From assembly GCF_947568905.1 (NCBI RefSeq), contig NC_079171.1, forward strand, positions 68,200,001-68,264,000: 64,000 nucleotides of DNA, given 5' to 3'. Below the pieces are notes generated by a model. It saw only the letters and a list, made by a program, of their open reading frames with translations, was not told the DNA's origin and did not search any database. Of this stretch, positions 23,931 to 54,152 are shown one piece after another. Position 1 is the first letter of the stretch. Each line of letters starts with the position of its first letter. Made by a program: the position numbers and the translations under genes. The DNA is from Ostrea edulis. Taxonomy: Eukaryota.

Positions 23931-24130
23931 GCGATTGTACCTTTCTAAATTATAATCATGACTATTACTGGAAGTGCCTGTAAAATAATGTAATCGAGTT
24001 TTCAATCTCATTTGTTAAGAAATAGAGTAGTTATTGTGAATCACATCATCCGTTGTCAAAAATAATTTAAAGAGAGTATAGCATTTATCCAGTTACTGCT
24101 ATTAGATGTATACATTTCTTTCTCTTTCAG

Positions 24131-24202
24131 GGACCTAGATGGCAATCAAATAACAAAGATACCCGAGACAGCATTCTCTGGTCTGGTGAATTTACAAACT
24201 CT
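24131..24202 (+). CDS. 72-nt LRR exon (one 24-aa typical-type leucine-rich repeat) of a multi-exon LRR protein gene
   Basis: Polypyrimidine acceptor tttctttctctttcAG ends at 24130 and donor GTAAGT starts at 24203. Exactly 72 nt, 1 nt + 23 codons + 2 nt, no stop. Translates (x)DLDGNQITKIPETAFSGLVNLQT(L), matching xLxxNxIxxIPxxAFxGLxxLxxL. The host gene (LGR, Toll, Slit-like or other) cannot be identified from the window. Confidence 0.87.
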
Positions 24203-24475
24203 GTAAGTGTGTTTTACTTGTATTTTTTTTAAAACAAAGAAAACGATCAGAAAAGTATCTGTATAATACCCACTTTACGAAAGACAAAAATACATATCTA
24301 GATTTGTAAAATAAAACATCCGAATCTTTATCACACACACAAAACAAGTACACTCGTGTCAAGATGAATTTTCAGAATCTCTAGTCAGATTAAACTAGAA
24401 AAAATAGTCACCACAATGATACCGTTCAATTTGTGAACATGTCGTCTATAAAAGAAGCGCAATATTTTGTTCCTA

Positions 24476-25005
24476 TGTAAGGTGAAGATAACGAACAGTG
24501 ATCAATCTCATAACTCTTATTACCAATACAAATAGATAGGTAGGCAAACACGGACCCCTCTACACACCAGAGGTGGAATCAGGTACCTAGGATGAGTAAT
24601 CATCCCCTATCAACCGATCACACCTGTCGTGACCCCTATATCCTGATCAGGTAAGCGGAGTTATCTGCAGTCAAAATCAGTGTGCCAAGAATGGCTTAAC
24701 AATCGGTATGACACATGACATACATCATTTGACCCAATGATGGGTTGAATTGACGAACTAGATCGTTATAACGACCATAGAATTTGCGAAATGCTGACTT
24801 CGATGGAGATTGTTGAAACCCCTGTATCATCAACTTGTTTGTCAGTAGCCTGAACCAATCTAAAAAAAACCTGACCGTATGCAAAACATGTTCTTGCGTA
24901 TCGAACGAGTTGAGATATCTGGACAGCATATGCAGGTGAGAGTTGAATATCAATGCATGAATATGGGATGTTGTTGATGGAGAAGCTAATTCCGTAAATC
25001 ACTAA
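24476..25005 (-). mobile_element. Penelope-like 3' fragment
   Basis: ORFs 24696-24953 and 24766-25095 contain SPAYAVQISQLVRYART and SAFRKFYGRYNDLV. Confidence 0.85.
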
Positions 25006-26269
25006 AGGAATACAAAATTGATCATGGGGTAAAGACAAACCTTTGAAGACATGAGGCAATGTCAAGTTGTGGATGCTTAAGCAGTATTTCCACACCAGGA
25101 ACTACATTCAGCACAAACAATGCGTATTGCTCATTTAACAAACTCATCTCGCAATGTATTACTTCGCCCAGTAATATAAACCCGCAATAGTTTATCTTGG
25201 TGTTGACTGAAGTCATGCCTAAGCAACTGCGTTGTGAATTACCGCTTTTTTTCAGCAGAATGATTGTTTGGAACGTATGGCTGACCGCAATTCTAAGTAT
25301 AAACTACAGATGAAACGCTGTTATGGTATACGTTGTGGCGTTCTGTTAAATCCGTGTAGCTTTTTAAAAAAAATTCCAAATGACATATTAGACCACAACT
25401 ATTTATTTTGTATTGCTTATAAGAGTTATGAGATTGATCACTGTTCGTTATCTTCACCTTGCATGTATGGTGTCTGAGTACAAACTCAATCTTCCCATTC
25501 CATACTATTGTGTTTGCACCTTCATTCATGCATTTGATTTGTTTTCAAAACCACGTTTCCAAAGCATCTGTATACATTGTATATGGTAATATATATGTAG
25601 ATAAAGTATAATAAGGGTCAACATTTTATTCATTCCCTGGGTAGTCAAAATCAATTCCAATAATTGGTGAATAAAATCATTTCTAGTTGGTATCAAATAG
25701 AATCAGTCACAATGTAAACCGAAAAAGGTAACGTCGTCGCCAGTGGTCAGAATTAAACGTTACATCAAATATACAGAATCAATAGTAGTCTATAGCAAGC
25801 AGAATCAATTCAGATATACACACAATGCAGTAAACAGAAGCATTACTAGTATGTAGCTCATGACATATCATATGGTATTCTAAATAATTATACGTTATCG
25901 TAAATATAATCAATCCTATTCGATGAAGAGGTGAAGAAAATTATTTAATGGTTACTAAATTAAGAGTTGGACAAACACAGACCCCTTGACATACCAGGGG
26001 TGTAATCAATCGGCAAAAGGGAATTACCGCATCCCTTATCAATATGTAACACATTATCTTCACCTTTCATATGGAAAATTGAATTCCGATGGAAAGCAAG
26101 ATCAATCTAAATATACAGCAAACAAAATAAACAATAGTGTACAGTACACAAAATCAATCTTCGCGTATACCAAGTAAAAGCAGTCTTAGTGCATGGCAAA
26201 TAAATCACTTTTTGTAAAGAACAATTCTTAGAAATTAACAAATATATTCAATTTTATCATCGCTTGATT

Positions 26270-26483
26270 CCCTATTGTTCAACGTCCCTCTTGAGAATAT
26301 ACGTCACCATTGCCGGTGAAGGGCTGCAGAATGTACGCTTATGCTTGGAACTTATGCCTTTTAGGTAGGAGGGATCTTTATCATGCAAAATCTGCTCTGA
26401 CACCAGGACCACCCCCATTTAGTCACATATTACGACAGACAAGGAATATTGGAGACCTACGTTAACCCGGGTCCCCACGGGAT
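26270..26483 (-). mobile_element. Internally deleted SINE copy retaining the longest 5' structured head
   Basis: Reverse complement begins atcccgtggggacccgggttaacgtaggtctcc...gtcgtaatatgtgactaaatgggg; 3' part matches the family tail. Confidence 0.7.
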
Positions 26484-26999
26484 TTAATACAATCGTTGTT
26501 GTTATTATTATTATGTTATTGTGATAAGTCAATATTAACAAACTATTAGCATCCATGACTCAGTTACCTTTTGTTTGTACCTGCCAACATTAACCGTAAC
26601 TTCAGAAGTCTGCACGGGTCTCCTAATTTTACAACTGAACAACTTAAAATATATTGCCAACATATGAATAATGTTGGTTTCCCCTCGATAAAGTTACATC
26701 AACCCAAACGATGTTATTCCGCCATTCATTCTGGCGATTATTCTTTACTCGAGGGTCGTTATAGGTACATATCAATCTTTTATAATGACCAGATTTTTTT
26801 ATGTCTTCCTGGTTTCGATGTAAAATAAGGAACTAAGTAACGAGGTCACCATTACGATGAGTGTTTACATTGTATATAGTGTAGCATATATACAATTTGT
26901 AACATGTAGGGGTCACCCAGCCAACTGCTGATTTCGCTCGCTATTACTTTACTTGCGTGATCAGGAAAGAGACTCAACAGCATCACTTGAAAATATAGC

Positions 27000-29050
27000 T
27001 CATTATCGAGGCAGTATAAGTTTCATGTTACACTGTTCGCTACACATATCCCTGCTCGGGAACCTTTGCTTAGCGTGAGTCCTTTCTGATTTTTTGGCAT
27101 CTGCCTATTAACGACATCCGCTGTTCCCGTCGACGACAGCAGTGGTCGTTCCCGGAAGAAGCCACGTCCTTATCCAGAGATTCCAAGATACTCTAACTGA
27201 AGAAGGCCTTCCAGCAAATAGCATAATTTGATATAAATTGAACCTCTGTCTTCTTCTCCGCCTCTGTTGTATGCAAGGTGAATATAACGAACAGTGATCA
27301 ATCTCATAACTCCTACAAGCAATACAAAATAGATAGTTGGGTAATCACGGACCCCTGGACACACCGGAGGTGGGATCAGGTGCCTAGGAGGAGTAAGCAT
27401 CTCCTGTTGACCGGTCACACCCGCCGTGAGCCCCATATCCTGTATGTAAATGTGCTACAGCTATGGTTCGTCCCTACCTGACATTATCTGTATCCATGGT
27501 ATTGTCATTGAGTTCACAAATAAAGGATTTTAGCTCCCTGTGGCTAGTCTGCTCTTCTGTAAGGAGAACCTCTATTTTTTTAAATATTTTTGTCTCGCAA
27601 TCTCCAGTTCCCTCTGTCGCTGGACATCCCTATTTTCCAGATGAGGCATGCGATCTTGAAAGATGAAAATCTGATTGGTAATCATGTCTTCCTGTTCAGC
27701 ATCCAGGGCTTCATATTGATGAGGTATATGGTTGAGCTTTTCTGTCATCCATGAGCTATCGTTTTCTTTAACTTCCTCAGAGGCCCTGGATTATTTGTTT
27801 TTCATTTTCGCGAGCTGTTCTCACCAGTAAGTATATTTTCCTTAAAGCGTCATGTTAGTTTGGTTATATAACTCTTGATAACGTTTTGTTCTGAAATTCA
27901 CATCTCCCAGCAGTCATTGTACATTTGTCTCTAACACAGCCTTACTTCCTCTGTTAGCTTCCCCCTCCTCCTAACAGTGTTTCTACAGCTGTACAATTTT
28001 GCTTTCATGTATGTCCTGAGCTTCGTTATGTTCACAATTTATTGCAGTTAATTCTACTTTTTTTCACTTCTTTGCTTCAATTGCAAATTCTCCTTTTTTA
28101 AAAAATGACATAACCTCCAGTTGTTTGTCACACTGTGTCATAATTTCCTCTCGATATTCACTTTTTTGTTTCTTTTCCTCCACAAATGTTCCCTAATTTA
28201 ATATCAGTTTCCCTTCCCCGTCGCCTTGCATCAAACAAAATTTGGCTTCATAGATCATTCTCACATATCACATTTTGATATTTGCAATTTCCCGCATTCC
28301 ATTTTTGCAGCATTAATTCCATACTATCATAGCTACTGCACGTTTCACTGATGATCGTTCGTTTGTGGCGACATCGTTTGGTATAACTTGGTAATTTACC
28401 CTATTTAGTAAATATCTGATTGCATGTATCGTTGTCAACTGTTCATTTACGAATACTGGTTATGCTTTGTTCAGCAATGAATGTATTTTTTATGAAAATG
28501 GCAGAATATGTTCTTGATATTGTAATCGCTGTTTTATGGCAGAATGACATTCCGAGATAATGGACCTTGCATCTGGACTAAGTTGAGACGCAAATGTAAC
28601 TGAATCATCCTTCAAGCAAAAGGACAACTCTGTCTTTCTACGGGCAGTTCAAGGAAATATCTATGAAATCATGTTTGATTGAATGCACAAGAATTTCTAG
28701 ACTGTGTTGTTTTTTATCCTTGAAAATTGGTAATCTTGTTTGTTGCTCATCAAGATTAGGAGTTTCGTTATTTTCCTGAAATTGGTTCTGATTGTTGCAC
28801 AAATTGTGACCAATGCAAGGTGAAGATAACGAACAGTGATCAATCTCATAACTCCTATAATGATATATGGTAATGAGAGTTTATATATCTATTATTATCC
28901 TGATAAGAAAATTGTGATCCATTGTGTGTTTCTCTCCACATGTAGCTGTTAGGCATAAGTTCTTCCGAGTTTTTGTTATAGCCATCATTGTGATTATGCA
29001 TTTAATATTTGACATCGAATGTGCCACTACAACATATCACTGGGTTAAAT
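27000..29050 (-). pseudogene. Decayed intronless ORF resembling the C-terminal GTPase half, helical bundle and coiled coil of an atlastin/GBP-type large GTPase
   Basis: Conceptual minus-strand translation through stops and frameshifts: SLEILVHSIKHDFIDIS...LP; LLNKA*PVFVNEQLTTIHAIRYLLNRVNYQVIPN...SVKRAVA; then a long E/K/Q-rich coiled-coil-like tail. Spacing L-x6-I-x3-F-x2-IS-x-F-x-LP resembles atlastin as recalled. No P-loop is seen. Interrupted by Penelope-like fragments. Confidence 0.42.
27252..27443 (-). mobile_element. Penelope-like 3' UTR fragment; similar short copies at about 1455-1597, 3847-3982, 12190-12325, 29050-29290, 46598-46830, 58165-58322, 60232-60372
   Basis: Family consensus; absent from the paralogous site at about 44935. 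Confidence 0.8.
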
Positions 29051-30625
29051 GCTGTCTGACCTTTCTCATACCTAGGTCTTTCTTGGCACAATGATTTTGA
29101 CTATGGATAACTCAGTTTACCTGATCAAGATGCAGAGCTCATGGCGGGTGTGACCGTTCGACGACAAATGCGTAGTCCTCCTAGGCACATAACCCAACTC
29201 TAGTATATCCAGGGGTCCATATTTACCCAATTCTCTCTTTTGCATTGATTATAGGAGTTATGATATTGATCACTTTTCGTAATCGTCATCTTTCAGTCTG
29301 CATCATTGGCTGCATTTACTGCATAACATCCATATGTGCCATCATCTGTTGTTGCATTATCTTCATCCATTACATGGCGTCTTCATTTTTGTGTTTCTGT
29401 TATAGGCTGACTGAGAATTTCATGTCCAGATAAACTACCCTGCCTTGATATTTCATCTTGCATTTCTTCCCTTTGAAGTGGAAATGTTTAAGTTCCCATT
29501 GCATTCCCTTCAGCGTGTTGAGGTTCCTCAGTTGTTTGGGATGGAGTTGTCTATTTCTCAAATACACGCCTTTCTCGTTTTTCTTTTGTTTATTTAGAGA
29601 TACAATTTATTTATCAGAAAAATAAGGTTTTGTCACCTTTTTGTCACCCTGGTTCAATAACAGCAAAAACAAAAACAAAAACGCTGCCGTCAACTGTTAC
29701 AGCACTTAGAGTGGACATTGTCTTTATTGAAATGGACTTTACCTTTGAGGTTGTTTTTATACTTGCTAGGCATCTATTGGGATATGACGTCATTCAATTT
29801 CATTCCCAAAATGCAAAACGGCAGTTTCCGTATGTGCATCTACCATAGTTTCATTATTACGAAAGTGTTCAAACATTTCGGACATTTAAAGCAAATATCG
29901 CTTATCATAGTTTATGCTAAGGTGTGTAGTTGAAATTACAGCATTTATTGTATTGTGTATGCTTATAATATCACAATAATAGTCGTAGATAGTTATAATG
30001 TATTTATTTTAATTCAGATTGTTGAAATTTTTGTATAATGTTATTAAAAACCAATTGATAGGCGAGTAACCTTTCACAAAATCGACATGTCAGTATGCCA
30101 ATAACAACGTTATTTAATTAGATACACAGATATGAACCAGAAGAAGAAGACTAAGTGATGTTGACTATGATATATTGACTCCAAATATGGATGAAAATAA
30201 AAATGGTTGATAGATAAACTGTCGTTGATAATGCAATGTTGAGTTAAAGGTCACATCAGGGTTTTTTTTCTAATCACGTGACCAACTTCCATTAAAATAC
30301 AATTACAGTGACAAACAGAATAAACCCGCTTATATGATTAAGAGACAGAGTTTCCACCGAGTTTGACCAGTCGACACGATATTTTTTACTCCTCCTAGTC
30401 ACCTGATCATACTTCTGGTTTGTTCAAGTCTCCGCGTTTTCCAACTCTAATATTTGTATACTTTATCGCAGTTGTGATTTACATCACGAGCCTTATTTTC
30501 ACCTTTTCTTTGTACAATTCAAACTTATGCAACACAGACTGATTGATCACTGTTCGTTATCTTCACCTTGCATCTAAATGTCAGGAAAATATTAAAGATT
30601 AATATTAAATTTACTTACTCTTTAG

Positions 30626-30766
30626 TGGACATAAATAACAAATCCAACATAGAACAACATATGTATCGCTCAGAAAAAAACATCAACAGTGCACACGAGG
30701 ATGAACCAATTCAAGATAATGTCCATAGTCATAACGTTGTTTAGTGTTGTAAAATATACAATCTAA
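30626..30766 (+). pseudogene. Degenerate two-LRR pseudo-exon, paralog of 54153-54290
   Basis: ttacttactctttAG ... GTAAGT, 141 nt, all three frames contain stops. Contains VHTRMNQFKIMSIVITLFSVV with an extra base near the 3' end relative to the paralog. Confidence 0.42.
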
Positions 30767-30806
30767 GTAAGTACCACTTGAAAATGAATGAATCCGATGT
30801 ATTTAA

Positions 30807-33804
30807 GAGGTTATCCATTACGATATCAGGCAGAGGTCGGCACATGCTATCTCTCAGATTTTCATGAAACTTGGTGTACAGGTTCCTGCTGACCTAAATA
30901 TTAAATTTGCCAAATAAAAAGTCTCTATCATGTTTAGTTTGGGTTCGACATTGAAAAACAACTTCGTGCAAAAAGGTCACGAAATATTGGAAAAAAGTGC
31001 TATGTTTGAACAGCTCTAAAATGACATATAACTAAGAAATAGAGAAACACAATATTTTATATGGTAGATATACACTATATGCAATAACAAAGAGGGTTTG
31101 TGTGTGTATATTCATCCAATGAATGAATTTATTAATTGTTAAAATTGCACATATTTCACATCAATATATTTTACAAGATAATGATCAAAATTTAAGATCT
31201 CATAAAACCCAATACAATGTCTCATCAGAAATAAATTATGTATAACCAGAAACTTGAAGAGGTGTATTTCAAGTTACAAAAATAAATTCAGTGGGAAAAG
31301 CAAGATTTGATGGTGAAAAGTTGAACTGAAATCTCCAAATTTTCAATAAGTGCAAAAATGTTAACTACTTTAATGAAGATTGTTGAACTACATAAATAGA
31401 AATAAATATGAAGTAGATATACCCAATCAATGATTAAAAGATTAAACTTCATAAAAAAATTACTAGAACATATGAACATTCAGAAATAAATGGCATGTCT
31501 TTGTATACAGTCTATATAATAAAGACCAAAAAAAATGCCTGTGTGAATCATTATATAAAATTTTACAAATTGATATGTTGATGTCATTTCTGATAGAGGA
31601 TTTGAGATAATAGTTAATTAATTAACACACATATCTGAAGTTAAAATTATTAGTAAATGAAATTTTAATCATTTGACTAACAATAACAATCTTAATTCAT
31701 TCACTCGCATTACAAACTTAACATTGGCAGATGTAGACGGGGGAGGGGGTGTTAAAACATACCCTCTCCCTTTCTCTGGGACATCTAGATAGTTATTTAG
31801 CATTAACCAGAAATTTGTTAACTCTCTTGTAAAGCATTTCCATTTGCATTCATGAAATAATATGCCAGATTTCATTTTCTGCCTACATCAGATTGGCAGG
31901 ACTTTAATGCATGTTTACTCTGGAGTTGAAATAGATATTGACCACTTCCAGATACAAGAAATGTTTGTTGAATTTTACCCAGTGACGGAAAATGTTCAAA
32001 AAGCATCTCCAATTGATGCATAAAAGGTTAATTAGCAATGAATAATAAACATATATATTTTATCGATTCATCGGAAATGACCTAATGCAGATCTTAGATC
32101 ATTTTTCTGGACCGCTAGAAATTATGAAAATTGGCACTGGATGTATATTGATACATGTATCTTAACAATTGATACATTAGTATGGTATCTTATTTTGCCA
32201 CCCCACCACTCTCTTCTAATTTATGTATAATGCCATAACAGTGTTTCTTTTGAATATTGGTTCACAAACAGGTATACAATTTGTGACTTCAAAAATTGAG
32301 ATATGCTGCTAACATAGAGTTAAAGTAGTGGTCATCATTTGATTATCTTTTTCAGCTGCAAAGTGTTTCTATGAAATAGCTGTCAATAGATCTAGATTGA
32401 AGTGGAACTATGAGTTATGCAATTCCCTTTATAAATTCAGAAGTCTTTTGTCTGTAGTAATTATATGTTCTCTCCAAAGCCTCTTCCTATATTGGACTCA
32501 GCTGAGATCTAAATAAGAATTAATGGAAATAAAATGATGAACATGTTTAAATAGCACTGTAAGCAATGCACTAAGGAAGTCAAAATCATATGGTTGATAT
32601 AGTCGCAAGGTCAAAGGTCATGGTATAACATAAATTCTGGTCATTACACATTTCATGTGAAACAAACTAACCCAATACCTTATCCCTCAAGATATAACAG
32701 ATCTGGCAATAATGAATGTTTTTCAAAAGTAGGTCAACAAGGTCAAAGTCAGAAATTCAAAAGTAAAGCTCTTTTCATTAGTGATCTATAATATGTGCAA
32801 TCTATATCAAAGCCCAATCCAAGATGGTTGAGAAACTTTATACCAGTTTAAAGTTTTTGAAAACCATGCCATTTTAAAGACTAAGGTCAGGTACTAAATT
32901 AAACGTTTGGTACTAAAGAATATACACATTTGTATATCATTATGTAAAATATCAATATAATAAAATCTGGGTTAAACTTCAAAACCAAGGTCACAATACC
33001 AAACAGCATGGTATCAAATGAAAGTTCTTGCCATAAGATATCTAAATACTAAACATAAAAGACTAACCTACGTTATATACTTCAGGAGAATATAAATATG
33101 AGAGCCCTATTACTAACATGAGCAAGTTCCAGACATACATGACCCCCTCCCCCGACTTTAGTCGTGGGCGCATAGTATAAATGAATCAACACAACTTAGG
33201 AACATTTGCATTTTGAAAGGATTTAGAGTGGCCCTGCTAACCTTGAAAAAGAATTTATTTTAATTTCCTGTATATTCCCATATCATACTTTGATCTCTTC
33301 CATACCTTAATTCTTTAGCCCCTGAATTGAACAAAATAAAATTTACACTACCTGAAGATCCTTGCATATGAATATGACTAATCATTGACATACTCTTCTT
33401 GAGAAGAGGATTGGTAAAGATGCTTCCTTATATTATCCCTTATAACACTTTGACCTTATAGCCTCATCCTACACCCAGCTCATGCATTAATAAATCCAAT
33501 CTACACAACCAGGGAATGCTTGCATAATTTAATTACATTAAACGACCCCATCCTATTTTTGCCTTTTCTTGATGATCTCCTTTCAAAGGGGGCATGGCCT
33601 TTCATTCAAATGAACATGAATCTCATTCACCCAATGGGGCTTTTGGTTTGTGCCAACTGCAAAGTTTGATTTAAATTGGTTCATTGGTTCTGGAGAAGAT
33701 GGGAATGGGAAATAATATGATCACAATGATGATAACAGAACCCAGATAATTTTTTGATGAGAAAAGCTCTCTTGAGTCTTCAGCATTTCAAAACATCACC
33801 TCTG

Positions 33805-33842
<38 letters not shown>

Positions 33843-36311
33843 GAGGTAGTGTTTGAAATTTTTTTAACAATAATTGTCTGAAGAAAGTTTAAAGCTTGTC
33901 GATTGGGTTAAAATCTTTGATAACAGTCATGAATTAAAAATACATGAATGTGCATGAGGAAATCATCTGTTGTGTGTGGCATCACATAAAACTTCAATAT
34001 GAAGGGTCAAGGTTGTAAGGCAAAAATGTTACTATCATATGACATAAGGAACACACATTTCTGTAATATCCAAACCCCATTTCTAATCACTTTTATGTTA
34101 TTGTCAAAGTTAAAGTTTTTATATTATATATCTATGTCTGTCAATTGTGTTAAAATAAAAGGATTGCGACATCATAACTTTGGATCCCTTTGATCAGGAT
34201 TTGTCTCAAGAAATATACATGTCAAATGTGGAATTAAGCCCTTATATGTAATATTTCTAAACTTACATAATTTAAGAATCATGACAATATGACAAGGTCA
34301 GATGTACCGTGCTCTGAATTTAAAATCTTTTGATTGAAATAAATAAATATACTCACTGATACAGTATGATAATTGGCTTACAGTAGCGTTGATTTGACTA
34401 TCATTATTTTCCAAATCTGTAATGAAATGGGTGTTTTATTCATTATCAAGCTTTGGCATATACATGTATGTCACACCAATACACTTTAGTATCTGTGTGC
34501 ATGCATACATGTATCAATCATCAGATTCTGTGTCATGTTAAACCATCTGATTTTTATAATCCATTCAGCTTAAATTTAGAGAAAGAAACAAGTAAATTAA
34601 TGATTAATTGTAAATCTGTACATGCAGTTACTACATTAACCTTTAATCCCACCCCACACACACATAATGGTTCGTAAGTTGCAAGAACTTGTTTCTAATC
34701 CTTTTGTATATAGTATATACAATAAAATATGTTCAAAACAAAACAATGATTCTTATAGTTGAATAATTCCACATATAAATATATTATTATTATTTTTATA
34801 ATAATTGTTCGGTTTTTGTCACATACATGCACGTACATATACTACCCTTTCACACTGATTCATTAATTCTTTAATAGTTATTAAATCTGGGAACCCACAA
34901 AACAAATAGATGTGAAAAGTAGCTAGTAAAAAAAAATCAGTAAAAAATAATCTGATATAATCTTAATATAGATATGTACATAGTTTGCAGAACAATAAAC
35001 ATCATTCATTTTTATAAACACTTATTGATTGTTACCACCTTCATCTTGTTTTTGTGTGATTCTATTGTTTCTTAATTCAAGGATTTGTGGATGAACATTG
35101 TGTTCTACATATTTTAAAAATCCCTACTGTTACATTAAAAAACAAAAACCCAGATTTATTCAATTTGTTTTAATGTAGGGATTTCTTACTTTAATCATTA
35201 TTTAAAAAAGAATCATTTCATCAAATGAATTGTTTGCATTGACACATCACGAGAACTTGCATCAAAATTGTCTAGCAATCAAGACAGAGTTTTCAAAGAA
35301 AAATGACACAGAAAATTCGACATTGATACTTACCACTTCCAACGGGAAAAACCACTGACAACTTGAAAGAGGAAAACATATTTCCATCAAAACATTGAAG
35401 TTTACTGCTCTGCCTGTTTTACACCTTCCTTTGTGTAGTAGATAACAACATTTGGTGGTGGTTACCTCTAGTAAATCTCCAAAGAATCGCAATTACCTCG
35501 GCATACTAGTAAGCATCTGCACCGTGCACGATAGTTTAAACAGTTACACTTTTTCGTCCAATTCGAAATAAATCTACCACGATCTGTACAGCAGGAGGTC
35601 AATCTCGGTTGAATGACACACGCAGTTCCAACTTTAAAATATCTTAAATATCCACTTATGTCTTTTGAACAATTATTAAGGGTTGACAAGTCCCTAAAAC
35701 AAGGACCACTCCTAGAAAAACTTCACGTTTATATCACTTGTCAGCCATATCTGTTTATCCACGAAACTTTGATAAGGTCCGTGCTGAATATTTATTTTTC
35801 ACCATCAAATGAATAAAACATTAATTCCACGTTTAAACTTGATAAAAGAAATCGAGATAAGTGAGATGTGTTCTAAATAAATACTTTTTTCTTCGGAAAT
35901 TACAATTTATGCAAGTTTTGGATCATTTTACATTTTTTACGTCAAGGAAGGTAACTCAATTTACTGGCTTTTCGGCTACTTCTGTCAGTAAATCCTCAAC
36001 AATTGCATTGTTCCCCAGCAATTTTATTGTTTCATCTTAATTATTAAGGGAATTTCTTCAAATAGTGTCTATACTTTCTGGACAAATTTTATTGTATTGG
36101 GTATATTTAACTTTACAAAATGATCGTTTTCTATAGATTATATAGGGTCCTCGGATTTATGAAATAGGCCTAGTTTTGGCACTTAACAATGTTTTTTGTG
36201 AAATTCACTTTACATACGATAAAATTGGCGTATGACCTTAACTTTTATTGGGTATGAATACAATTTTGGGGAATTGGATGCGCCAGCCATATTATAGCTA
36301 CTGCCTGATAA
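30807..36311 (-). mobile_element. 5.5-kb insertion (decayed DNA transposon, possibly Sola-like) defined by a paralogous empty site
   Basis: Paralog reads atttaa|tggcaaaag uninterrupted at 54325-54339; here atttaa|gagg...gcctgataa|ttgcaaaag. 10-bp inverted repeat at 30824-30833 and 36301-36310. Cys/His-rich decayed ORF at about 35300-35720 (-). Confidence 0.6.
33180..33790. mobile_element. Non-autonomous Helentron (HINE)-like element with oyster-type satellite monomer
   Basis: tacactacctgaagatccttgcatatgaatatgactaatc...ttcttgagaagag monomer, aaattggttcattggttctggagaaga box and aaagctctcttgagtcttcagc end resemble oyster HINE segments as recalled. Confidence 0.5.
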
Positions 36312-37536
36312 TTGCAAAAGACACATTTTAGATGTGTAAATTCAAGTCATTACATTTGAAAACAATATCCATTGACAGTTGTGATCTTGGGTAAGTAAAG
36401 AAGTTAAGTGATTGTTCATAACGGTCATACATTCACCAGTCCATGCACAATAAGGTCATTTGCAAAATGGAAGTTTGTGTTTTGCAAGCTGAAGTTTATT
36501 TTATTTTAAATCCTGAGTGACCATATACTGGCCCATGTATATAACCTAACCTCGTACAGTTTACGCTTCACATAATCCCCATCAGTGATTATAAAGTTTG
36601 AACTGCACTACTCTAGGTATATATCGTATGATATAGGTAATAAGTTTTTGAAACCACCATGCACAATGTACATTGTGTGGTGTTACAGTACCAGCTACGT
36701 TTTTTCTCGAAATGATAAATGATAGAACACGATACAAGCACGATATGATAAGATATATGTAGGCTAGGTAAGCTACACACACAATGCGATGTTATAAAAG
36801 AAAAACCTGATAAACGCAAATAATAATAAAATGATAAACGTAAAACGTGATGAACGAACATCACAACAGATCTGATCAACGCGAAATGTGATAAACGCGC
36901 TACACCATAAACATAAGAAGCGATAACTGATATTCATGATGAACAGACAATCTGATAGAAATGTTGTAAATTCAGAAATAACTTAGACAGAACGAAATGT
37001 TGAGAGTTACAAGATTATGTTGATATTAATTGAAATATATCAATATTCACTATGTACCAGACAGGTATATCCAAAAACATCCAATTGGAAGGCAATAATG
37101 TATTTGCACAAATAATTACCATGTTTTTTGTTTAGTTCTGTATTTCCTGTTATAAATGATGCAGTTTTTCAAATATGAATATGTGTTTCTTCTGTTCAAT
37201 ATAAAACTTTTGCTATCAGTAAAGGAAACTCCTTGCAAGTGAAATACTCAAGTTTTAAACGCCTTCATTAACCTGAAGGCAGATTTATATTTTATTTGTT
37301 TACTCATTTACTAGATGAAGACACTCGCAAGCGCAAAAAATTGAATTGTAGCTGTTGACTTTTAAGATTTGGGGGTTTTATACATGAAGTTTCAACTTCA
37401 AACAAACATTAACACAGGAACCACTAATATAACGTATATTAAATTGAAAACCGGAGCATTCATCCCTTTTAGTTTTGAAAAAAAAAGATACCTTGACTTA
37501 TGTTGACTGCGTAGTAGTGTGATGGAACCGGGCATA

Positions 37537-38030
37537 TGCAAGGTGAAGATAACGAACAGTGATCAATCTCATAACTCCTACAAGCAATACAAAATAGATA
37601 GTTGGGTAAACACGGACCCCTGGACACACCAGAGGTGGGATCAGGTGCCTAGGAGGAGTAAGCATCCCCTGTTGACTGGTCACACCAACCGTGAGCCCAA
37701 TATTCTGATCAGGTAAACGGAGTTATCCCCGGTCAAAATCAGTGTGCCAAGAACGGCTTAACAATCGGTATGAAACACGTCAGACAGCATTTGACCCAAT
37801 GCGAGGTTGTATTGACGATCTAAATCGTTATAACGACCATCGAATTTGCGAAATGCTGACTTCAATCGAGACTGTTGAAATTCCTGTACCATCAACTTGT
37901 TTGTCAGTAGCTTACCTCGATTTAAAAACTGAATATACCCAGAACAAACTCTTCGTGTCCATGGGAAAGAATTCGTGCCCATGGGAATTCCAACAGACTG
38001 TTGGAAGACCTGATCACCAAAGACCACGAA
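37537..38030 (-). mobile_element. Penelope-like fragment with internal deletion joining QQSVGIPMGTN to the C-terminus
   Basis: ORF 37758-38027: MVFGDQVFQQSVGIPMGTN...FLNRGKLLTNKLM...VFHTDC*. Confidence 0.85.
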
Positions 38031-38170
38031 GATATATGATTAAGCCTTTACCACTTTTGCTAGACATACATTAATCAACGATTAGTCACCTTGCTCACTT
38101 TATTTATCCCCCCTTCAGTTTGTACGTTAATCAACGAAACTAGTTGGTGTCTTCCTTCTCATTTGTTTCA

Positions 38171-38494
38171 GCGCCGCAGTGGCCTATACCTTATAGACTT
38201 CACCTGACATACGGAATGCCGGTTTCGAATCCTATCTGCGACACACCTAAGTCGTTAAAACATGTAATAACATTTCCATCGCCAAACACTCGACATCAAA
38301 GGTGGATGTCACAGGTCCTCTAAGATACCTTAAGAACAGATATTCCGTAAAACAGTAGGTACAGTACACTGCCCAATGGCCGTAAGTGTGGGAAAAGACC
38401 TAGATTTGAAGCCCTCCATTGGTCTTGGTTAAAGCTCCATATGAGTGACACAATCTCGAGAGAGACGTTAAACAAGATAAATCCAATAAATAAA
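38171..38494 (+). mobile_element. Diverged tRNA-derived SINE of the same family; paralog at about 55705-56015
   Basis: gcgccgcagtggcc head, gtttcgaatcc B box, cgacacacctaagtcgttaaaac body. Confidence 0.75.
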
Positions 38495-38739
38495 TCCCCT
38501 TTGCTTCCGATACCCGTATGCGGTGTAACAACCCCACCCATTTGATTGATTGAAATAGAGCAACACTAAACAATCACCTCTATAACGTAGCAATAAGATT
38601 CATGTATATATAAATACTTTAGCCAAAACCAGATTCCAATTTAGCCTCTATCTGTGTACAATAGTCCTAAACTTGTAAAAAAAAACCCATAAGGTTTGTT
38701 TACCATAAACAATGTTAAGCAACATATGGCATGCGTGTT

Positions 38740-40670
38740 CTATGAAAGATCAATTGAAATATACAGTTTTACCAAATATAATTCTAAACAAAAATGACCA
38801 AACCCCTCTTGTCTGCGTTAGATAACGCTATATTTTCCGGTACTTTGCTCGCCAGCCTGGACAATGGATAAGATATGCTCTGTTGAGTATGATATATCCA
38901 TCTACCATTCTGCCAAATTTGCAACTATGTTAAGAGTTCCCAAACTTAGTAGATTTAGTAAATTGATAATATATGGTTCTGTCATCGTTTAAAGTCACCA
39001 TGGCTGGTATTTGAGGAGACACGTCGAATATTATCAAATGTAATATCATTCTCACTAGCAATGTCAGTGTTAAAAGAACTAGTATAATTCATACCTCCCC
39101 AGCAAGATCCACATAGATGCAATGCTACAATAATCCCAGCAAGTTATTTCCACTTCACCTTGTTGCAGACACGTGATTGGTTTTCTAACTTTAGATGCCT
39201 ATACACAGTAATAAAAATGTCATGGTCATAATATAAAACAAAAATCATTGCAACGTAAACGATTTAGTGACACTCTATTTCCCTGAAATAGCTCTAAAAG
39301 TTTATTGTTATTTCGGATTTCAAATATTTCGGTTGAGCATCACTGACGATACATTATGCAAGGTGAATATAACGAAAAGTGATCAATCTCATAATTCCTA
39401 CAAGCAATACAAAAAAGATAGTTGGACAAACACGGACCCCTGGACACACCAGGGGTGGGATCAGGTGCCTAGGAGGAGTAAGCATCCCCTGTTGACCGGT
39501 CACACTCGCCGTGAGCCCCATATCCTGATCAGGTAAACGGAGTTATCCGCAGTCAAAATCAGTGTGCCAAGAACGGCTTAACAATCGGTATGAAACATGT
39601 CAGACAGCATTTGACCCAATGCGAGGTTGTATTGACGAACTAGATCGTTATAACGACCATTGCATTTGCGAAATGCTGACTTCAATCGAGACTGTTGAAA
39701 TCCCTGTACCATCAACTTGTTTGTCAGTAGCTTACCTCGATTTAAAAACTGACTATACCCAGAACAAGCTCTTGCATATCGAATCAGTTGAGATATATAA
39801 ACACCATATGCAGGTGATGATGGAATATTGCTACATAAATGTCTTAAATGTCGAAATGCGCATCTGGTGTATCAAAATTGGTACCGTATAAATTCTACAT
39901 AATGACCCTTGGGTACAGCCCTCTGCTGGTTGACTGTTAGTCGCCGATGATCTTTACAACTCAGTAGCTAAGTACTTCGTTACTAACTTGAACATACGGA
40001 TGTATATTTAATTGCTATTGTGAAATTTAGAAATTCATTTCAAAATTAAGGATACCCAGCTGGTGCATTAACATTGGTACCGTATAAGTTTTACATTGGC
40101 CTATTGTGTGATATCAACATCTGAAATCAAATTTAGGAATTTGCAGTTTAAAACATCACTGATTGTTTTCATTAATGACAAAATATTGTAGCATTTTACC
40201 TACACTGTCTTTATAATCCTGTACATTGTGAATTAAAGTTGCTTTTTTGTGACGTGAATCAGTGCGAAATACACTTAGCTACACGGTACTGCAGTATTTT
40301 CTTTCTTGGGATCTTTGTTTTATTGATATCTGTCTTGACATCGCGCGTTATCTGCAATATTAACACGGTATTCTGTTGTGATGATAGTGTTGGTTTTTCT
40401 TTCATTCTAAATATACGCTATCTATTGAGCACAGTTTGGATCAGAAACATCTTGAAAAAGGCATTGCATTTTTTCGGTGAAGTCTGAAGCTCTGGTAAAC
40501 TATATACTGCTGTGATCCAATAATCATTAATTTCAAGCATGGCAGAACAAAGCTTATGGTACATAGAAGCAATAATACAAATTGGGATGTAGTTGATAAC
40601 GTGAACCTTCCAAATTACAAGTCTACAGTAGTTTTCATCATACCACTGGCTGTGATAGGCCATTGGTTAA
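38740..40670 (-). pseudogene. Diverged paralog of the 17-18 kb decayed ORF, split by insertions at about 39270-40100
   Basis: 38740-39260 aligns to 17070-17600 and 40130-40670 aligns to 17690-18220. Reads IVALH/IYVDLAGEV*IILVLLTLTLL and PYIINLLNLLSLGTL. Confidence 0.3.
39356..39845 (-). mobile_element. Penelope-like 3' fragment inserted in the decayed 7TM-like ORF
   Basis: Near-consensus copy starting atgcaaggtgaatataacg. Confidence 0.85.
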
Positions 40671-41319
40671 AAGGTCCGAGAGTCATGTATTTTCGTAACT
40701 TGTCTTAAAACAGATCTCCGATGTTACGTTAGGTTCTAACACGCTAAATAATCACCAATGAGACAGTTGTGAGCGTTAAACGTTAACATAAATATGTGAC
40801 GAAACGATACATCCATTCTCAAATATACATAATGCAAAAGTGTTGCAGTGATCAACCTCCGAACTCCTATAAGCAATAAAAAAAATTCCTCGACCAATGG
40901 AGTAAGCATACCCTGTCGACCGATCACACCCGCTGTGAGCTTTATACCTTTATCATAAGTGAAAACCAGTGTGTCAAGAATGGCCTAACAATCAGAGTGA
41001 AACACGTCAAACACCATTTGACCCAATGATATGTTTTATTCTGAAACTGGATCACCATAACGACCATATAGTTTGTGAAATGCTGATTTTAAACGAGGTT
41101 GTTGGAACCCCTGCACCATCAGCTCGTTTTTCAGTAGCCTGTTTCGATATTAAAACCTGATAACACGAAGAACACGCAGAACCACTCCTTGTGTATCGAA
41201 TTATGTGATCGCACCTTTCTAAATTATAATCATAAGACTGTTACTGGAAGTTCCTGTAAAATAATGCAATTGTGTTTTCCAGCTCATATTCTTAAGAAGG
41301 ATAACTCAACTGACAACTC

Positions 41320-41855
41320 AACTGTATGACAAACGGGATGATTTCAGCTTCTTCATCGTCAACTTCCCACATTTATGTAGCAATATTCCATTATCACCTG
41401 TATATGGTGTTTATATATCACAACTGATTTGATATGCAAGAGCTTGTTCTGGGTATAGTCAGTTTTTAAATCGAGGTAAGCTACTGACAAACAAGTTGAT
41501 GGTACAAGGATTTCAACAGTCTCGATTGAACTCAGCATTTCGGAAATTCGATGGTCGTTATAACGATCTAGTTCGTCAATATAACCTCGCATTGGGTCAA
41601 ATGCTGTCTGACGTGTTTCATACCGATTGTTAAGCCGTTCTTGGCACACTGATTTTGACTGGGGATAACTCCGTTTACCTGATCAGAATATTGGGCTCAC
41701 GGTTGGTGTGACCGGTCAACGGGGGGTGTTTACTCCTACTAGGCAACTGATTCCACTTCTTGTGTGTCCAGGGGTCCGTGTTTACCCAACTATCTATTTT
41801 GTACTGCTTGTAGGAGTTATGAGATTGATCACTATTCGTTATCTTCACCTTGCAT
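41320..41855 (+). mobile_element. Penelope-like 3' fragment (RT thumb, stop, 3' UTR), ending about 46 bp upstream of LRR exon 2
   Basis: YDKRDDFSFFIVNFPHLCSNIPLSPVYGVYISQLI*YARACS...RKFDGRYNDL...GQMLSDVFHTDC* followed by a UTR ending ttatcttcaccttgcat; absent at the paralogous site near 24020-24090. Confidence 0.85.
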
Positions 41856-41901
41856 TTATTCACTTACTGATATTAATTGTATATATTTCTTTCTCTTTCA
41901 G

Positions 41902-41973
41902 GCACCTCAGCACCAATCAAATAACAAATATACCCGATACAGCATTCTCTGGTCTGGTGAATTTACATACTCT
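41902..41973 (+). CDS. Second 72-nt LRR exon, paralog of 24131-24202, same phase
   Basis: Acceptor tttctttctctttcAG ends at 41901 and GTAAGT starts at 41974. Translates (x)HLSTNQITNIPDTAFSGLVNLHT(L). 62/72 nt identical to the first exon by hand alignment; flanking intron is homologous. Confidence 0.87.
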
Positions 41974-42691
41974 GTAAGTGTATTTTACTTGTAATTGTTA
42001 ACAAAAATAAACGATAAGAAAATCCTCTGTATAATACCCGTTTTACGAAATATAACAATACATATTTAGGCTTTTAAAATAAAACATTAGAATCTTTATC
42101 ACACATACAGAACAAGTACATTCGTGTCAAGATTATTTTCAGGATCTCTAGTCAGTTTAAACTGGACAAAATATTCACGACAATGATAGTGTACACTTTC
42201 TGAACATGTCCTCTATGGGACATTCGCAGTATCTTGTTCAGATGTATTTTAAACAGAAATGTGTATCAGGAATCAATGATAGGCATTTGTATGCTCAAAG
42301 AAAGTCTTACTGGCTGTGTTTATAATGCAGAGACTATTGCAGATAGGATTGGGTCAGTTGGTCTGACCTGAATTTTGAGTGAGTGAGTTCGATTGTTCTC
42401 GGTCGGTGTAAAATTGAGCACCCCTATGGTAGGGATATTGATAATCCTTTTCACATGTAAAACTTATTCGGTACCAATGTTGATGCACCAGCTGCTCATT
42501 TCTACAAATAATGTATTTTCTGTGTTATATTCGATACAACTTGTGTTCTTCAAACTTTTTTTTCGAATGACAAATAATTGGAAATTAATAACATTAATTT
42601 CAAACGATGGTGTTACTGTGTTACTAGTCGAACTCTGAATCATGACAAAGTAAAGATACGCATGCAACGAGAGTCAATCTCATATTTATCA

Positions 42692-43170
42692 TGAAAGGTG
42701 AAGATAACAATAAGGATCAACCTTACAATCCTATAATGAATTCAAAATAACGAGTTGGGCAAACACGGACCCCTGAACACACCTAGGACGAATAAGCATC
42801 CCCTGTCGAACGGTAACATCCACCATGAGCTTTATATCATGATCAGTTAAACGGAATTATCCGTAGTTAAAATTAGGGTGTCAAAAGCGAACTGCCAATC
42901 AGAATGAAACACTCCAGACGACATTTGGGCCAATGATATTCAGTATTTGCAACTATATTGTTATAACGATGATTGCATTTGCGAAACGCATACTATAAAT
43001 GAAACCCCTGCATCATCAACGTGTTTGTAAATAACCTGAACTAATCGGAAAACTGACCATACGCAGAATCAGTTCTTGCGTATGGAATAAGTTGAGAGAT
43101 CTGAACACGATGTGAAGGTGGGAGTTGAATATTGCTGCATAAATATGGGAAGTTGATGATGGAGAAGCTA
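42692..43170 (-). mobile_element. Older Penelope-like 3' fragment; paralog begins at about 63806
   Basis: Diverged match to the family; same flanks at 63780-64000. Confidence 0.72.

Positions 43171-54054: not shown

Positions 54055-54057
<3 letters not shown>

Positions 54058-54101
<44 letters not shown>
54058..54101. repeat. (TA)n microsatellite; another at about 33807-33841
   Basis: Direct reading. Confidence 0.95.
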
Positions 54102-54103
<2 letters not shown>

Positions 54104-54152
54104 AAATATCAGGAAAAAATAAAGGTTAATATTAAATTCGCTTACTCTTTAG

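What the first reader, a model, noticed from the sequence alone, without database searches (positions are those of the whole stretch)
24131..41973. Same-phase LRR exon cassettes propagated as ~18-kb modules, with changes concentrated on the concave binding face
Seen: two 72-nt exons with intact AG/GT sites lie 17771 bp apart in duplicated intron context. They differ at 10 of 72 nt, of which 9 are in amino-acid-changing codons and 1 is silent (cta/ctc). All framework residues are kept. Four of the six residue changes (D/H, D/S, G/T, Q/H) fall on the x positions of LxxLxLxxN once adjacent exons are joined (LQTLDLDGNQI vs LHTLHLSTNQI). Known: those positions form the concave ligand-binding beta-sheet and are the hypervariable sites of LRR immune receptors such as lamprey VLRs and plant NLRs; symmetric 72-nt exons can be added or skipped in frame. 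Inference: this may be one gene growing a variable LRR array by intragenic exon-module duplication, possibly with alternative splicing, i.e. a candidate diversified recognition receptor in a bivalve. Two exons are far too few for a statistically meaningful dN/dS.
Basis: partly seen in the sequence, partly recalled or inferred. Interest (0 to 1): 0.72.

Follow-up and report, generated by a model that had tools for sequence, protein, structure and literature searches.

The report
Oyster LRR-kringle receptor gene exons
The two 72-base exons are real single-repeat exons inside one giant-intron copy of a flat-oyster receptor-like gene family (leucine-rich repeats, a kringle domain, a membrane anchor) that has been copied about 17 times along 10 Mb, and their predicted binding-face codons change about 13 times faster than the neighbouring introns; no RNA data were available to show the exons are used.

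Summary
Exons 24131-24202 and 41902-41973 are 72 nt, have cag|..|gtaagt borders and differ at 10 nt (6 residues, 1 silent change).

The genome is Ostrea edulis. The exon plus its flanks occurs at least 54 times. About 217 related one-repeat exons lie in tandem gene units on C8 (61.5-76.4 Mb), with outliers on C7, C4 and C2.

Each unit runs in one order. First comes a signal/LRRNT exon, then 72-nt LRR exons separated by 13-100 kb introns. A cap-like exon, a Kringle exon, a transmembrane segment and a long tail with no Pfam domain follow.

A and B are old module copies, about 71% identical in their flanks. Each has a 99-99.6% identical twin in a different paralog, so recent spread was by large duplications and exchange between paralogs.

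Diversifying change is well supported. In 10 independent sister pairs the five concave-face codons diverged at 8.7%, against 0.66% for introns (p = 5e-11).

No RNA run was available. The host unit also lacks an intact first exon, so use of these two exons is unproven. The scan has met this family before in other windows.

The parts
24131..24202 (+). LRR exon A: 72 nt, phase 2-2, one 24-residue typical LRR.
   Evidence: Searches give the sequence and borders. Pfam LRR_8 matches at E = 8e-5. Twins 99-100% identical lie at C8 72.948, 73.138 and 75.560 Mb. In those paralogs it is the first LRR exon after the signal/LRRNT exon.
41902..41973 (+). LRR exon B: 72 nt, phase 2-2. It joins in frame to A, because CT plus G makes a Leu codon.
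   Evidence: Searches give the sequence and borders. Pfam LRR_8 matches at E = 3e-4. The nearest copy is at C8 67.708 Mb, 99.6% identical over 3365 nt. Three of the 13 mismatches lie inside the 72-nt exon, and all three change a residue.
24081..41851 (+). Module A: exon A plus its downstream intron.
   Evidence: Collinear blocks 76-85% identical to module B. The intron piece 26837-30806 has 99% copies in three paralogs. It also has about 90% copies some 10-17 kb upstream of B-type exons in nine other units.
41852..56046 (+). Module B: exon B plus the part of its downstream intron that is homologous to module A.
   Evidence: Self-comparison of the window. Insertions of about 5.5-6.4 kb differ between the two modules.
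63114..63898 (+). Relic of a third module. The exon-downstream intron flank is present but the exon is missing.
   Evidence: 79% identical to 42015-42782 and 82% to 24249-24471. Homology starts about 42 nt after the position of the donor site.
62873..63112 (+). Tandem array of a 51-nt unit, 4.7 copies, standing where the third module's exon should be. The unit resembles the polypyrimidine/acceptor region of the LRR exons.
   Evidence: The resemblance to the acceptor region is my reading of the sequence.
6311..17230 (+). Tandem duplication of about 6.5 kb inside the intron upstream of exon A: 6311-10733 against 12799-17230, 94% identical. No exon lies in it.
   Evidence: In one search, 12442-15529 and 18537-20000 match the 72.94 Mb paralog at 98%, and 5673-10733 matches C8 65.43 Mb at 96%.
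22902..23911 (.). Very high-copy interspersed repeat that flanks the exons. Other copies lie at 19006-19550, 24417-24987, 37535-37953, 39356-39842, 41308-41855 (inverted) and 60744-61131.
   Evidence: Self-matches. Contig word-depth is thousands of times that of the exon region in four DNA runs.

Best explanation
Exons A and B are two consecutive single-repeat exons of the extracellular LRR arch of one member of a tandemly amplified gene family in Ostrea edulis.

The family plan, from the 5' end, is:
- a first exon with Met, signal peptide and LRRNT;
- a run of 72-nt, phase-2 exons, each coding one 24-residue typical LRR, separated by introns of 13-100 kb;
- a cysteine-containing cap-like exon whose borders are phase 2 then phase 1;
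- a small exon, then a Kringle exon (phase 1-1);
- a compact 3' end coding a Cys-containing stalk, a transmembrane helix and a cytoplasmic tail of about 650 residues with no Pfam domain.

The LRR array was built by duplication of exon-plus-intron modules. Whole units and sub-gene blocks were later copied about 17 times along C8 and exchanged between paralogs. As a result, neighbouring exons of the host unit have their nearest relatives in different paralogs.

The five solvent-exposed beta-strand codons of each repeat (LRR positions 2, 3, 5, 7, 8) are under diversifying selection, while the framework is conserved. The family therefore most likely encodes a germline-diversified set of cell-surface binding receptors.

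Shown here: exon structure, copy map, domain order, phase compatibility, rate excess at the hypervariable codons, and mosaic kinship.

Inferred: that the LRR exons are spliced to the Kringle-transmembrane part; that the proteins are receptors; that the function is immune; and that this particular unit is expressed.
For: Copy map:
- At least 54 copies of the exon core occur in the genome. A search with the 24-residue exon peptide gave 217 candidate LRR exons, of which 150 were scored.
- They lie on C8 61.5-63.6 Mb (-), 65.4-75.8 Mb (+), 76.25-76.41 Mb (-), 33.3 Mb and 46 Mb, and on C7, C4 and C2.

Domain order:
- Kringle hits (PF00051) lie downstream on the same strand of every LRR series, 17 of them on C8 +. 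The host unit's Kringle exon is at 68544797-68545030 and scores 55.9 bits against a cut-off of 34.3.
- There are 17 first exons on C8 +. The tested copy (C8 72.924 Mb) scores 27.3 bits against the LRRNT cut-off of 25.8.
- The same order is seen at each separate locus in transcription direction. It includes a compact 35-kb copy on C2 with only two LRR exons.

Phase chain: the LRR donors are phase 2. The cap exon has a phase-2 acceptor and a phase-1 donor. The Kringle exon is phase 1-1.

3' end: the NCBI model LOC130049766 joins cap-exon sequence, Kringle, a transmembrane helix and the tail. LOC130049289 matches the host tail exon at 98%.

Integrity: 37 of 37 fetched exons keep the frame and both splice sites.

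Selection:
- LRR positions 5, 7 and 8 each carry 9-10 different residues among 30 copies, while L6, N9, I14, L22 and L1 never vary.
- By parsimony on a flank-derived tree, the hypervariable codons have 70 nonsynonymous and 6 synonymous events, and the rest have 38 and 25. Nonsynonymous events per site in the hypervariable codons are 3.6 times the intron rate.
- In ten independent sister pairs the counts are: intron 174/26538, hypervariable codons 13/150, rest of exon 4/570, and nonsynonymous to synonymous 13:1. Fisher p = 5e-11.

Mosaic kinship.
Against: - There is no transcript evidence. No RNA run holds the exon. The four runs that were laid cross the exon/intron border, so they are genomic DNA.
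- No public gene model was found that joins LRR exons to the Kringle part.
- The host unit (C8 67.99-68.55 Mb) has no intact first exon. It holds only two decayed relics, at 68065888 and 68158028, with a frameshift and either a gt-to-gc donor change or a stop. None lies in the window. This copy may therefore be 5'-truncated.
- A, B and the preceding LRR exon are so young (99-99.6% to their twins) that their intactness says nothing about their own function.
- The cap exon does not match Pfam LRRCT.
- The tail has no recognisable signalling domain.
- The excess at the hypervariable codons was measured by counting methods, not by a likelihood codon model.
- The flank-derived tree may not be the tree of the exons if short tracts were exchanged.
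Confidence: 0.72

Rival explanations
1. One reading: a single gene is currently growing its LRR array by tandem intragenic duplication of an ~18-kb exon module. A and B are the products of that duplication, and variable exon inclusion provides receptor diversity.
For: - Modules A and B are collinear homologues over about 14 kb.
- The exons are symmetric, so any of them can be added or skipped in frame.
- A recent intragenic-looking pair does exist further down the same unit. The exons at 68.352 and 68.408 Mb are each other's nearest kin, with flanks 97.8% identical.
- A third, exon-less module relic lies 21 kb after B.
Against: - A and B flanks are only about 71% identical, and the two exons fall in different deep clades of the flank tree.
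- Each has a 99-99.6% twin in another paralog megabases away.
- The A-then-next-exon pair is itself repeated at 72.95, 73.14 and 75.56 Mb.
- There are no RNA data of any kind.
Confidence: 0.12
2. The host unit is a dead, 5'-truncated partial duplicate. Exons A and B are intact only because they were copied very recently from working paralogs, and they are never translated.
For: - No intact signal/LRRNT first exon lies between the previous unit's Kringle (67.981 Mb) and the host Kringle (68.545 Mb). Only two decayed relics are there.
- In close paralogs an intact first exon lies 6-26 kb upstream of exon A. It is missing here.
- Three of the 17 Kringle units lack a first exon and three have two, which is a sign of partial duplications.
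- Each of exons A, B and the preceding LRR exon is 99-99.6% identical to a twin.
Against: - The host 3' end is intact. The cap and Kringle exons are open with good splice sites, and the tail ORF runs 657 codons without a stop.
- B differs from its twin by 3 residue-changing substitutions in 72 nt, against 9 in about 3200 nt of intron (p = 0.002). That looks like continuing selection.
- An unrecognised alternative first exon is possible. Another follow-up of this scan reported alternative first exons in a related gene; I did not check that here.
Confidence: 0.3
3. The clustering of differences at the concave-face codons comes from short-tract gene conversion among the many near-identical exons, which swaps the variable ends. 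It does not come from point mutation plus positive selection.
For: - The framework bases are almost identical in all copies, so short conversion tracts would be invisible outside the variable codons.
- A and B differ by a contiguous run at exon nt 7-12.
- Mosaic kinship shows that exchange between paralogs does occur on a larger scale.
- Another follow-up of this scan proposed tract exchange for a sister case.
Against: - In the ten youngest sister pairs, most of the 13 differences in hypervariable codons are single-base changes in separate codons, by my reading of the exon sequences.
- The rest of the exon (4/570) and the flanks (0.66%) show no accompanying tract.
- Conversion alone does not explain a 70:6 excess of nonsynonymous over synonymous events. 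It could still spread selected variants.
Confidence: 0.15
4. The mosaic and the huge array are assembly artefacts of a repeat-rich region.
For: Near-identical (99-100%) multi-kb blocks lie megabases apart. Such blocks are hard to assemble.
Against: - Independent DNA runs give contigs that match the window across exon A and its flanks with 0-5 mismatches (records 4, 27, 30).
- Copies differ by consistent, graded divergence of 0.3-30%.
- The unit order is regular over 17 units.
- Long-range correctness could not be tested here.
Confidence: 0.05

Closest known systems
Ectocarpus LRR-ROCO candidate pathogen receptors (Zambounis et al. 2012, PMC3341825)
   Same: - Each LRR is coded by its own 72-nt (24-residue) exon.
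- The exons keep the reading frame, so repeats can be gained, lost or shuffled.
- The genes are clustered, with birth and death and non-coding exon relics in the introns.
- Positive selection acts on the LRR exons.
   Different: - A brown alga, not an animal.
- The LRR motif and intron phase differ.
- The partner domains are Roc-COR GTPase/kinase, not Kringle plus a transmembrane segment.
- The introns are small there. Here they are 13-100 kb, and whole 0.3-0.9 Mb units are repeated.
Animal genes with one typical LRR per 72-nt exon (Slit, LGR4-6, LRIG); from my own knowledge, not checked in a paper here
   Same: The 24-residue typical LRR (LxxLxLxxNxIxxIPxxAF) is coded by serial symmetric 72-nt exons between an LRRNT and a C-terminal cap.
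   Different: - Those are single-copy, conserved developmental genes with no hypervariable face.
- None has a Kringle after the LRR arch.
- There is no 7TM, Ig or EGF module here. Only the absence of a Pfam match in the tail, the Pfam-tested 233-aa model P0026 (a Kringle exon plus the following small 3' exons) and the cap exon was tested.
Lamprey/hagfish variable lymphocyte receptors
   Same: Diversity sits on the same concave-face positions of 24-residue LRR modules, and there is a large genomic reservoir of LRR modules.
   Different: - VLR cassettes have no splice sites and are copied somatically into an incomplete gene. Here every module is an ordinary exon with canonical splice sites, and the diversity is in the germline.
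- The membrane attachment is a transmembrane helix plus a long tail, not a GPI-linked stalk.
Kringle-containing receptors (ROR, MuSK, Kremen)
   Same: A single extracellular Kringle lies next to the membrane in a type I membrane protein.
   Different: - They have no LRR arch.
- The tail here has no kinase domain or any other Pfam domain.
Toll-like receptors of bivalves
   Same: They are expanded families of LRR ectodomain receptors in oysters.
   Different: - None of the 150 listed TIR hits (230 candidates) falls anywhere in the cluster.
- The TIR matches elsewhere in this genome sit in open frames of about 600-900 residues, unlike these genes, which have one repeat per exon.

Membership tests
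Typical-type leucine-rich repeat (Pfam clan LRR, LRR_8) | 24-residue repeat with LxxLxLxxNxI...F...L framework | tested here: met
   Both window exons and all 37 fetched copies keep L6, N9, I/M11, I14, F/L19, L22 and L1.
Typical-type leucine-rich repeat (Pfam clan LRR, LRR_8) | Profile match to Pfam LRR_8 | tested here: inconclusive
A single exon matches at E = 8e-5 and 3e-4 (22.8 and 20.9 bits). That is below the 27-bit gathering score, as expected for one repeat.
Capped extracellular LRR domain (LRRNT ... LRRCT) | N-terminal cysteine cap (LRRNT) after a signal peptide | tested here: met
   This is met for the family. The tested first exon (C8 72.924 Mb) scores 27.3 bits against a cut-off of 25.8, and there are 17 intact copies on C8 +. 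It is not met for the host unit itself, which has only decayed relics.
Capped extracellular LRR domain (LRRNT ... LRRCT) | C-terminal cap matching Pfam LRRCT | tested here: not met
   No LRRCT hit lies in the cluster. The cysteine-containing exon before the Kringle has no LRRCT match. I call it cap-like only from its position and phase.
Kringle domain proteins (PF00051) | Profile match above the gathering score | tested here: met
   The host exon scores 55.9 bits against a cut-off of 34.3, E = 5.5e-15. The same subtype lies downstream of every LRR series.
Lamprey VLR-type somatically assembled receptors | Cassettes without splice sites that flank an incomplete germline gene and are copied in somatically | tested here: not met
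   All modules are exons with cag|...|gtaag borders in a fixed phase. Somatic rearrangement could not be tested.
Toll-like receptors | Cytoplasmic TIR domain | tested here: not met
   None of the 150 listed TIR hits (230 candidates) falls in C8 61-76.5 Mb or in the C7, C4 or C2 loci. The tail has no Pfam domain.
Exon-shuffled, positively selected LRR receptor families (Ectocarpus ROCO type) | One LRR per frame-preserving 72-nt exon, clustered paralogs, exon relics, and positive selection on ligand-facing sites | tested here: met
   The description of the algal family comes from PMC3341825. This is a likeness in how it works, not homology, because the partner domains differ.
Dscam-like alternative exon arrays | Transcripts that each use a subset of the arrayed exons | not testable with these tools
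   No RNA run holds the exon. The runs that were laid are DNA.

The most novel reading that the evidence does not exclude
The roughly 15 Mb of one-repeat exons may work as a combinatorial repertoire. Because every LRR exon is symmetric and shares the same splice-site context, individual cells could include different subsets of exons, or use the duplicated first exons as alternative starts. A few dozen germline units would then yield many receptor variants, an invertebrate counterpart of Dscam or VLR diversity built on giant-intron splicing.
Probability: 0.08. Interest if true: 0.9.

Novelty: new variant of a known kind. Interest (0 to 1): 0.55.

Why it matters
Bivalves lack antibodies and rely on expanded germline receptor families. 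Most described expansions (TLRs, C1q, FREPs and others) are of compact genes.

Here a receptor-like family of LRR arch, Kringle, transmembrane segment and long tail is built from one repeat per exon. It is spread over about a fifth of a chromosome, and the predicted binding face has a measured substitution rate about 13 times the neutral rate.

Two full-text searches found no paper describing the family. NCBI gene models that I found capture only its 3' end. The family is therefore effectively invisible in current annotations and expression studies of a species whose culture is limited by parasites.

The find gives a concrete and testable candidate for variable recognition in oysters. It is also a natural example of exon-module birth, death and exchange between paralogs.

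I could not link it to the published Bonamia-resilience region on 'OE-C8' (PMC9488685). That assembly and its coordinates differ, and the reported interval does not obviously cover this part of the chromosome.

Tried and rejected
RNA evidence. The single run search gave no RNA holder. The single read-laying run showed that runs X2-X4 and X6 are DNA, because their contigs cross the exon/intron border.

Domains. I looked for TIR and LRRCT in the cluster and found none.

More exons in the window. A motif scan and tblastn with both exon peptides found only A and B. No ORF exceeds 130 aa. There are no tRNA or Rfam hits.

Fetching the whole host unit (68.0-68.66 Mb).

Public full-length models. The exhaustive search with the Kringle exon returned only fragments of this family, P0026 and P0061. 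Two word searches returned tail-only or Kringle-plus-tail models.

Conserved downstream intron. I first read the strongly conserved roughly 250 nt after the exon as a possible regulatory element. I then set it aside, because it coincides with the query I used to collect the copies and is therefore subject to ascertainment. The rate tests use 3.2-kb flanks of sister pairs instead.

Other points.
- One sister pair, L015/L030, aligned badly beyond 1.2 kb and was left out of the ten-pair test.
Full report
**1. The observation**

Exon A (24131-24202) and exon B (41902-41973) lie on the + strand. Each is 72 nt, follows ...tttctctttcag and precedes gtaagtgt. They differ at 10 nt: nine in six residue-changing codons and one silent.

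The reading frame starts at the second base. The first base completes a Leu codon begun by the 'CT' that ends the previous exon, so both flanking introns are phase 2 and the exons are symmetric.

Four of the six replacements fall at LRR positions 5, 7, 8 and 2. The surrounding introns are homologous in nine collinear blocks, 24081-38524 against 41852-56046, at 76-85% identity.

A motif scan and tblastn find no other LRR exon in the window. There is no ORF above 130 aa, and no tRNA or Rfam family.

**2. The exon is one of hundreds**

The window is G000:C8:68200001-68264000. The 369-nt exon-plus-flank gave 248 candidate places, and the 40 that were scored are 83-100% identical.

A 24-nt core occurs 54 times with two mismatches or fewer, and 0 times for the reversed control. 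The 24-residue peptide gave 217 candidates, of which 150 were scored. They lie at:
- C8 61.5-63.6 Mb (-)
- C8 65.4-75.8 Mb (+)
- C8 76.25-76.41 Mb (-)
- C8 33.3 Mb and 46 Mb (-)
- C7 88.50-88.66 Mb (-)
- C4 0.47-0.49 Mb (+)
- C2 17.09 Mb (+)

All 37 copies that I fetched keep the frame, the cag acceptor and the gtaag donor.

**3. What gene this is**

An earlier follow-up of this scan (s1-292136, 3.1 Mb away) called its gene 'LRR-kringle'. I tested that lead.

Kringle (PF00051) hits of one subtype lie downstream, on the same strand, of every LRR series. There are 17 on C8 + between 65.9 and 75.8 Mb. Further copies lie on the minus-strand clusters and on C7, C4 and C2.

For the host unit, the LRR hits listed lie at these C8 coordinates:
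- 68126419
- 68224132 (exon A)
- 68241906 (exon B)
- 68321704
- 68351895
- 68408154
- 68463174

All seven are 72-nt exons with the same splice context.

The 3' part of the host unit is compact:
- A cysteine-containing exon at about 68540044 has a phase-2 acceptor and a phase-1 donor.
- The Kringle exon at 68544797-68545030 is phase 1-1 and scores 55.9 bits.
- Small exons follow at 68545667, 68546028, about 68546590 and 68546990.
- A 657-codon open frame at 68549881-68551851 has no Pfam domain.

That frame is 98% identical to NCBI 'uncharacterized protein LOC130049289 [Ostrea edulis]', which names the organism. The paralogous model LOC130049766 (625 aa) runs from a Met inside the cap exon through the Kringle and a Cys-containing stalk. 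It continues through a hydrophobic transmembrane stretch followed by basic residues, and then the tail.

The family is therefore a type I membrane protein. The public models I found all lack the LRR exons.

The 5' end of the family is an exon coding Met, a signal peptide and an LRRNT. The tested copy (C8 72.924 Mb) scores 27.3 bits against a cut-off of 25.8, it ends in a phase-2 donor, and 17 intact copies lie on C8 +.

A compact paralog on C2 has first exon, two 72-nt LRR exons, cap exon, Kringle and tail within 35 kb. The constant order at every locus and the unbroken phase chain (2-2 ... 2-1, 1-1) are my grounds for treating LRR exons and Kringle-transmembrane exons as one gene. This is inference, not transcript evidence.

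**4. How A and B relate**

A and B are not sister copies. Their flanks (190 nt upstream and 220 nt downstream) are about 71% identical and the exons 86%. On a flank-derived tree they sit in different deep clades.

- Exon A has twins at 72.948, 73.138 and 75.560 Mb that are 99.0% identical over 3.4 kb. In those units A is the first LRR exon, 6-26 kb after the first exon.
- The exon that follows A in those three units is identical among them. It differs from the window's B at six bases, five of them residue-changing, while the flanks differ by about 2.3%.
- B's nearest copy is at 67.708 Mb, in the neighbouring upstream unit. It is 99.6% identical over 3365 nt.
- The preceding host LRR exon (68.126 Mb) is nearest to 73.721 Mb, at 99.6%.
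- Two later host exons (68.352 and 68.408 Mb) are each other's nearest kin at 97.8%, which is a genuine within-unit duplication.
- The intron piece 26837-30806 has 99% copies in the three A-twins. It also has about 90% copies some 10-17 kb upstream of B-type exons in nine other units.
- A third module copy at 63114-63898 has lost its exon. A 51-nt tandem array resembling the acceptor region stands in its place.

The A/B split is old, and recent propagation is by large duplications and exchange among paralogs, with exon loss as well as gain.

**5. Selection on the binding face**

Among 30 copies, LRR positions 5, 7 and 8 carry 9-10 different residues each and positions 2 and 3 carry 4-5. L6, N9, I14, L22 and L1 never vary.

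On a tree built from the flanks of 37 copies:
- the five hypervariable codons show 70 nonsynonymous and 6 synonymous events;
- the other 18 codons show 38 and 25 (dN/dS about 0.5);
- nonsynonymous events per site in the hypervariable codons are 3.6 times the per-site rate of the flanking intron.

The cleanest test uses ten independent sister pairs whose introns differ by 0.66% (174/26538):

| Class | Differences | Rate |
|---|---|---|
| Intron flanks | 174/26538 | 0.66% |
| Hypervariable codon bases | 13/150 | 8.7% (13 times intron) |
| Rest of exon | 4/570 | 0.70% |

Changed codons are 13 nonsynonymous to 1 synonymous. Fisher p = 5e-11 for hypervariable against intron, and p = 0.79 for the rest of the exon against intron.

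Most of these changes are single-base changes in separate codons. That fits point mutation plus positive selection better than tract conversion, though conversion may spread variants.

That these positions form the concave beta-sheet is established structural knowledge of LRR proteins. I made no model, because joined exons were not to be searched or folded.

**6. What remains open**

Expression is open. The four runs that were laid are DNA, since their contigs run straight across the exon/intron border, for example 24137-24430. They do confirm the local sequence independently.

The host unit has no intact first exon between 67.99 and 68.54 Mb. There are only two relics, with a frameshift and either a gc donor or a stop, and none in the window. 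Homology to the 72.94 Mb twin does run upstream of A to at least 12442.

Three of 17 Kringle units lack a first exon and three have two. Partial duplicates therefore exist, and this unit may be one of them, or it may use an unrecognised start.

**7. Comparison and novelty**

One LRR per symmetric 72-nt exon is known, from my own knowledge, in Slit, LGR and LRIG genes. The combination with clustering, exon shuffling and positive selection has been described for Ectocarpus LRR-ROCO genes (PMC3341825).

New here are three things: the LRR-Kringle-transmembrane architecture; the scale, with about 17 tandem units of 0.3-0.9 Mb and introns of 13-100 kb; and the quantified rate excess. Two full-text searches found no description of such a family.

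The scan has already met this family in other windows of this genome (s1-292136, s1-279174, s1-274687, s1-279151). My tests on different DNA agree with their main points.

A link to the Bonamia-associated region of 'OE-C8' (PMC9488685) could not be established.

**8. Verdict**

The selection claim is supported and extended. The 'single growing gene' and 'alternative splicing' parts are not supported or not testable. The result is a new variant of a known kind, of moderate to high interest, pending transcript evidence.

Noticed in passing
window 62873-63898: This is a third copy of the module in which the 72-nt exon and about 41 nt of intron are gone. They are replaced by 4.7 copies of a 51-nt unit that looks like the exon's polypyrimidine/acceptor region. 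It is an example of exon death inside the array.
   Followed up: partly
window 22902-23911, 24417-24987, 25326-25527, 41308-41855 and other places: A repeat of about 0.5 kb hugs both exons, 272 nt after A and, inverted, 47 nt before B. Its word-depth in four DNA runs is thousands of times that of the exon region. I did not classify it. It could serve as a substrate for non-allelic recombination.
   Followed up: no
G000:C8 68065888 and 68158028 (L051, L050); also 75618560 (L052) and about 15 more: Decayed copies of the signal/LRRNT first exon sit inside the gene units at recurring positions. Met and the signal peptide are kept, followed by a frameshift and either a gt-to-gc donor change or a stop. 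They are conserved among units because the whole module was copied.
   Followed up: partly
G000:C8 65.4-75.8 Mb: First exons and Kringle exons both number 17 on the + strand, but they do not pair one to one. Three Kringle units have no intact first exon (66.35 Mb, 68.54 Mb which is the host, and 74.25 Mb). Three have two first exons (69.52/69.53, 72.92/73.13 and 74.72/74.94 Mb). This points to partial-unit duplications or alternative promoters.
   Followed up: partly
G000:C2:17082001-17118000 (L053-L056): This is a compact 35-kb member of the family with only two 72-nt LRR exons and 2-7 kb introns. Its tail reads in three different frames with a stop between them, so it may be a pseudogene or carry extra introns. 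It probably shows the family's state before the array and the introns expanded.
   Followed up: partly
L036 and L044 (G000:C8:68544001-68552000): The stretch after the Kringle has the pattern Cys-Gly-Ile-Arg ... Lys-Ile-Val ... Pro-Trp-Met-Cys-Ser-Ile. That recalls the activation site and first strand of a trypsin-like domain, but only about 130 residues separate the Kringle from the membrane and Pfam finds nothing there. It may be a remnant of a plasminogen/HGF-like ancestor.
   Followed up: no
L044:3881-5851 (host tail exon): The cytoplasmic tail carries about seven copies of a short motif (G-x-C-I-A-E-V/I-N-F-D-V) spaced roughly 40-60 residues apart in an acidic, low-complexity region. It has no Pfam match. 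JGI metagenome proteins 32-40% identical over much of the tail exist (P0154-P0157).
   Followed up: no
window 24203-24490 and its copies: The roughly 250 nt downstream of the exon is as conserved among copies as the exon framework (pi about 0.05-0.13), while the sequence upstream of -50 is not (pi 0.3-0.5). Part of this is ascertainment from the query I used. A splicing-regulatory role is not excluded.
   Followed up: partly
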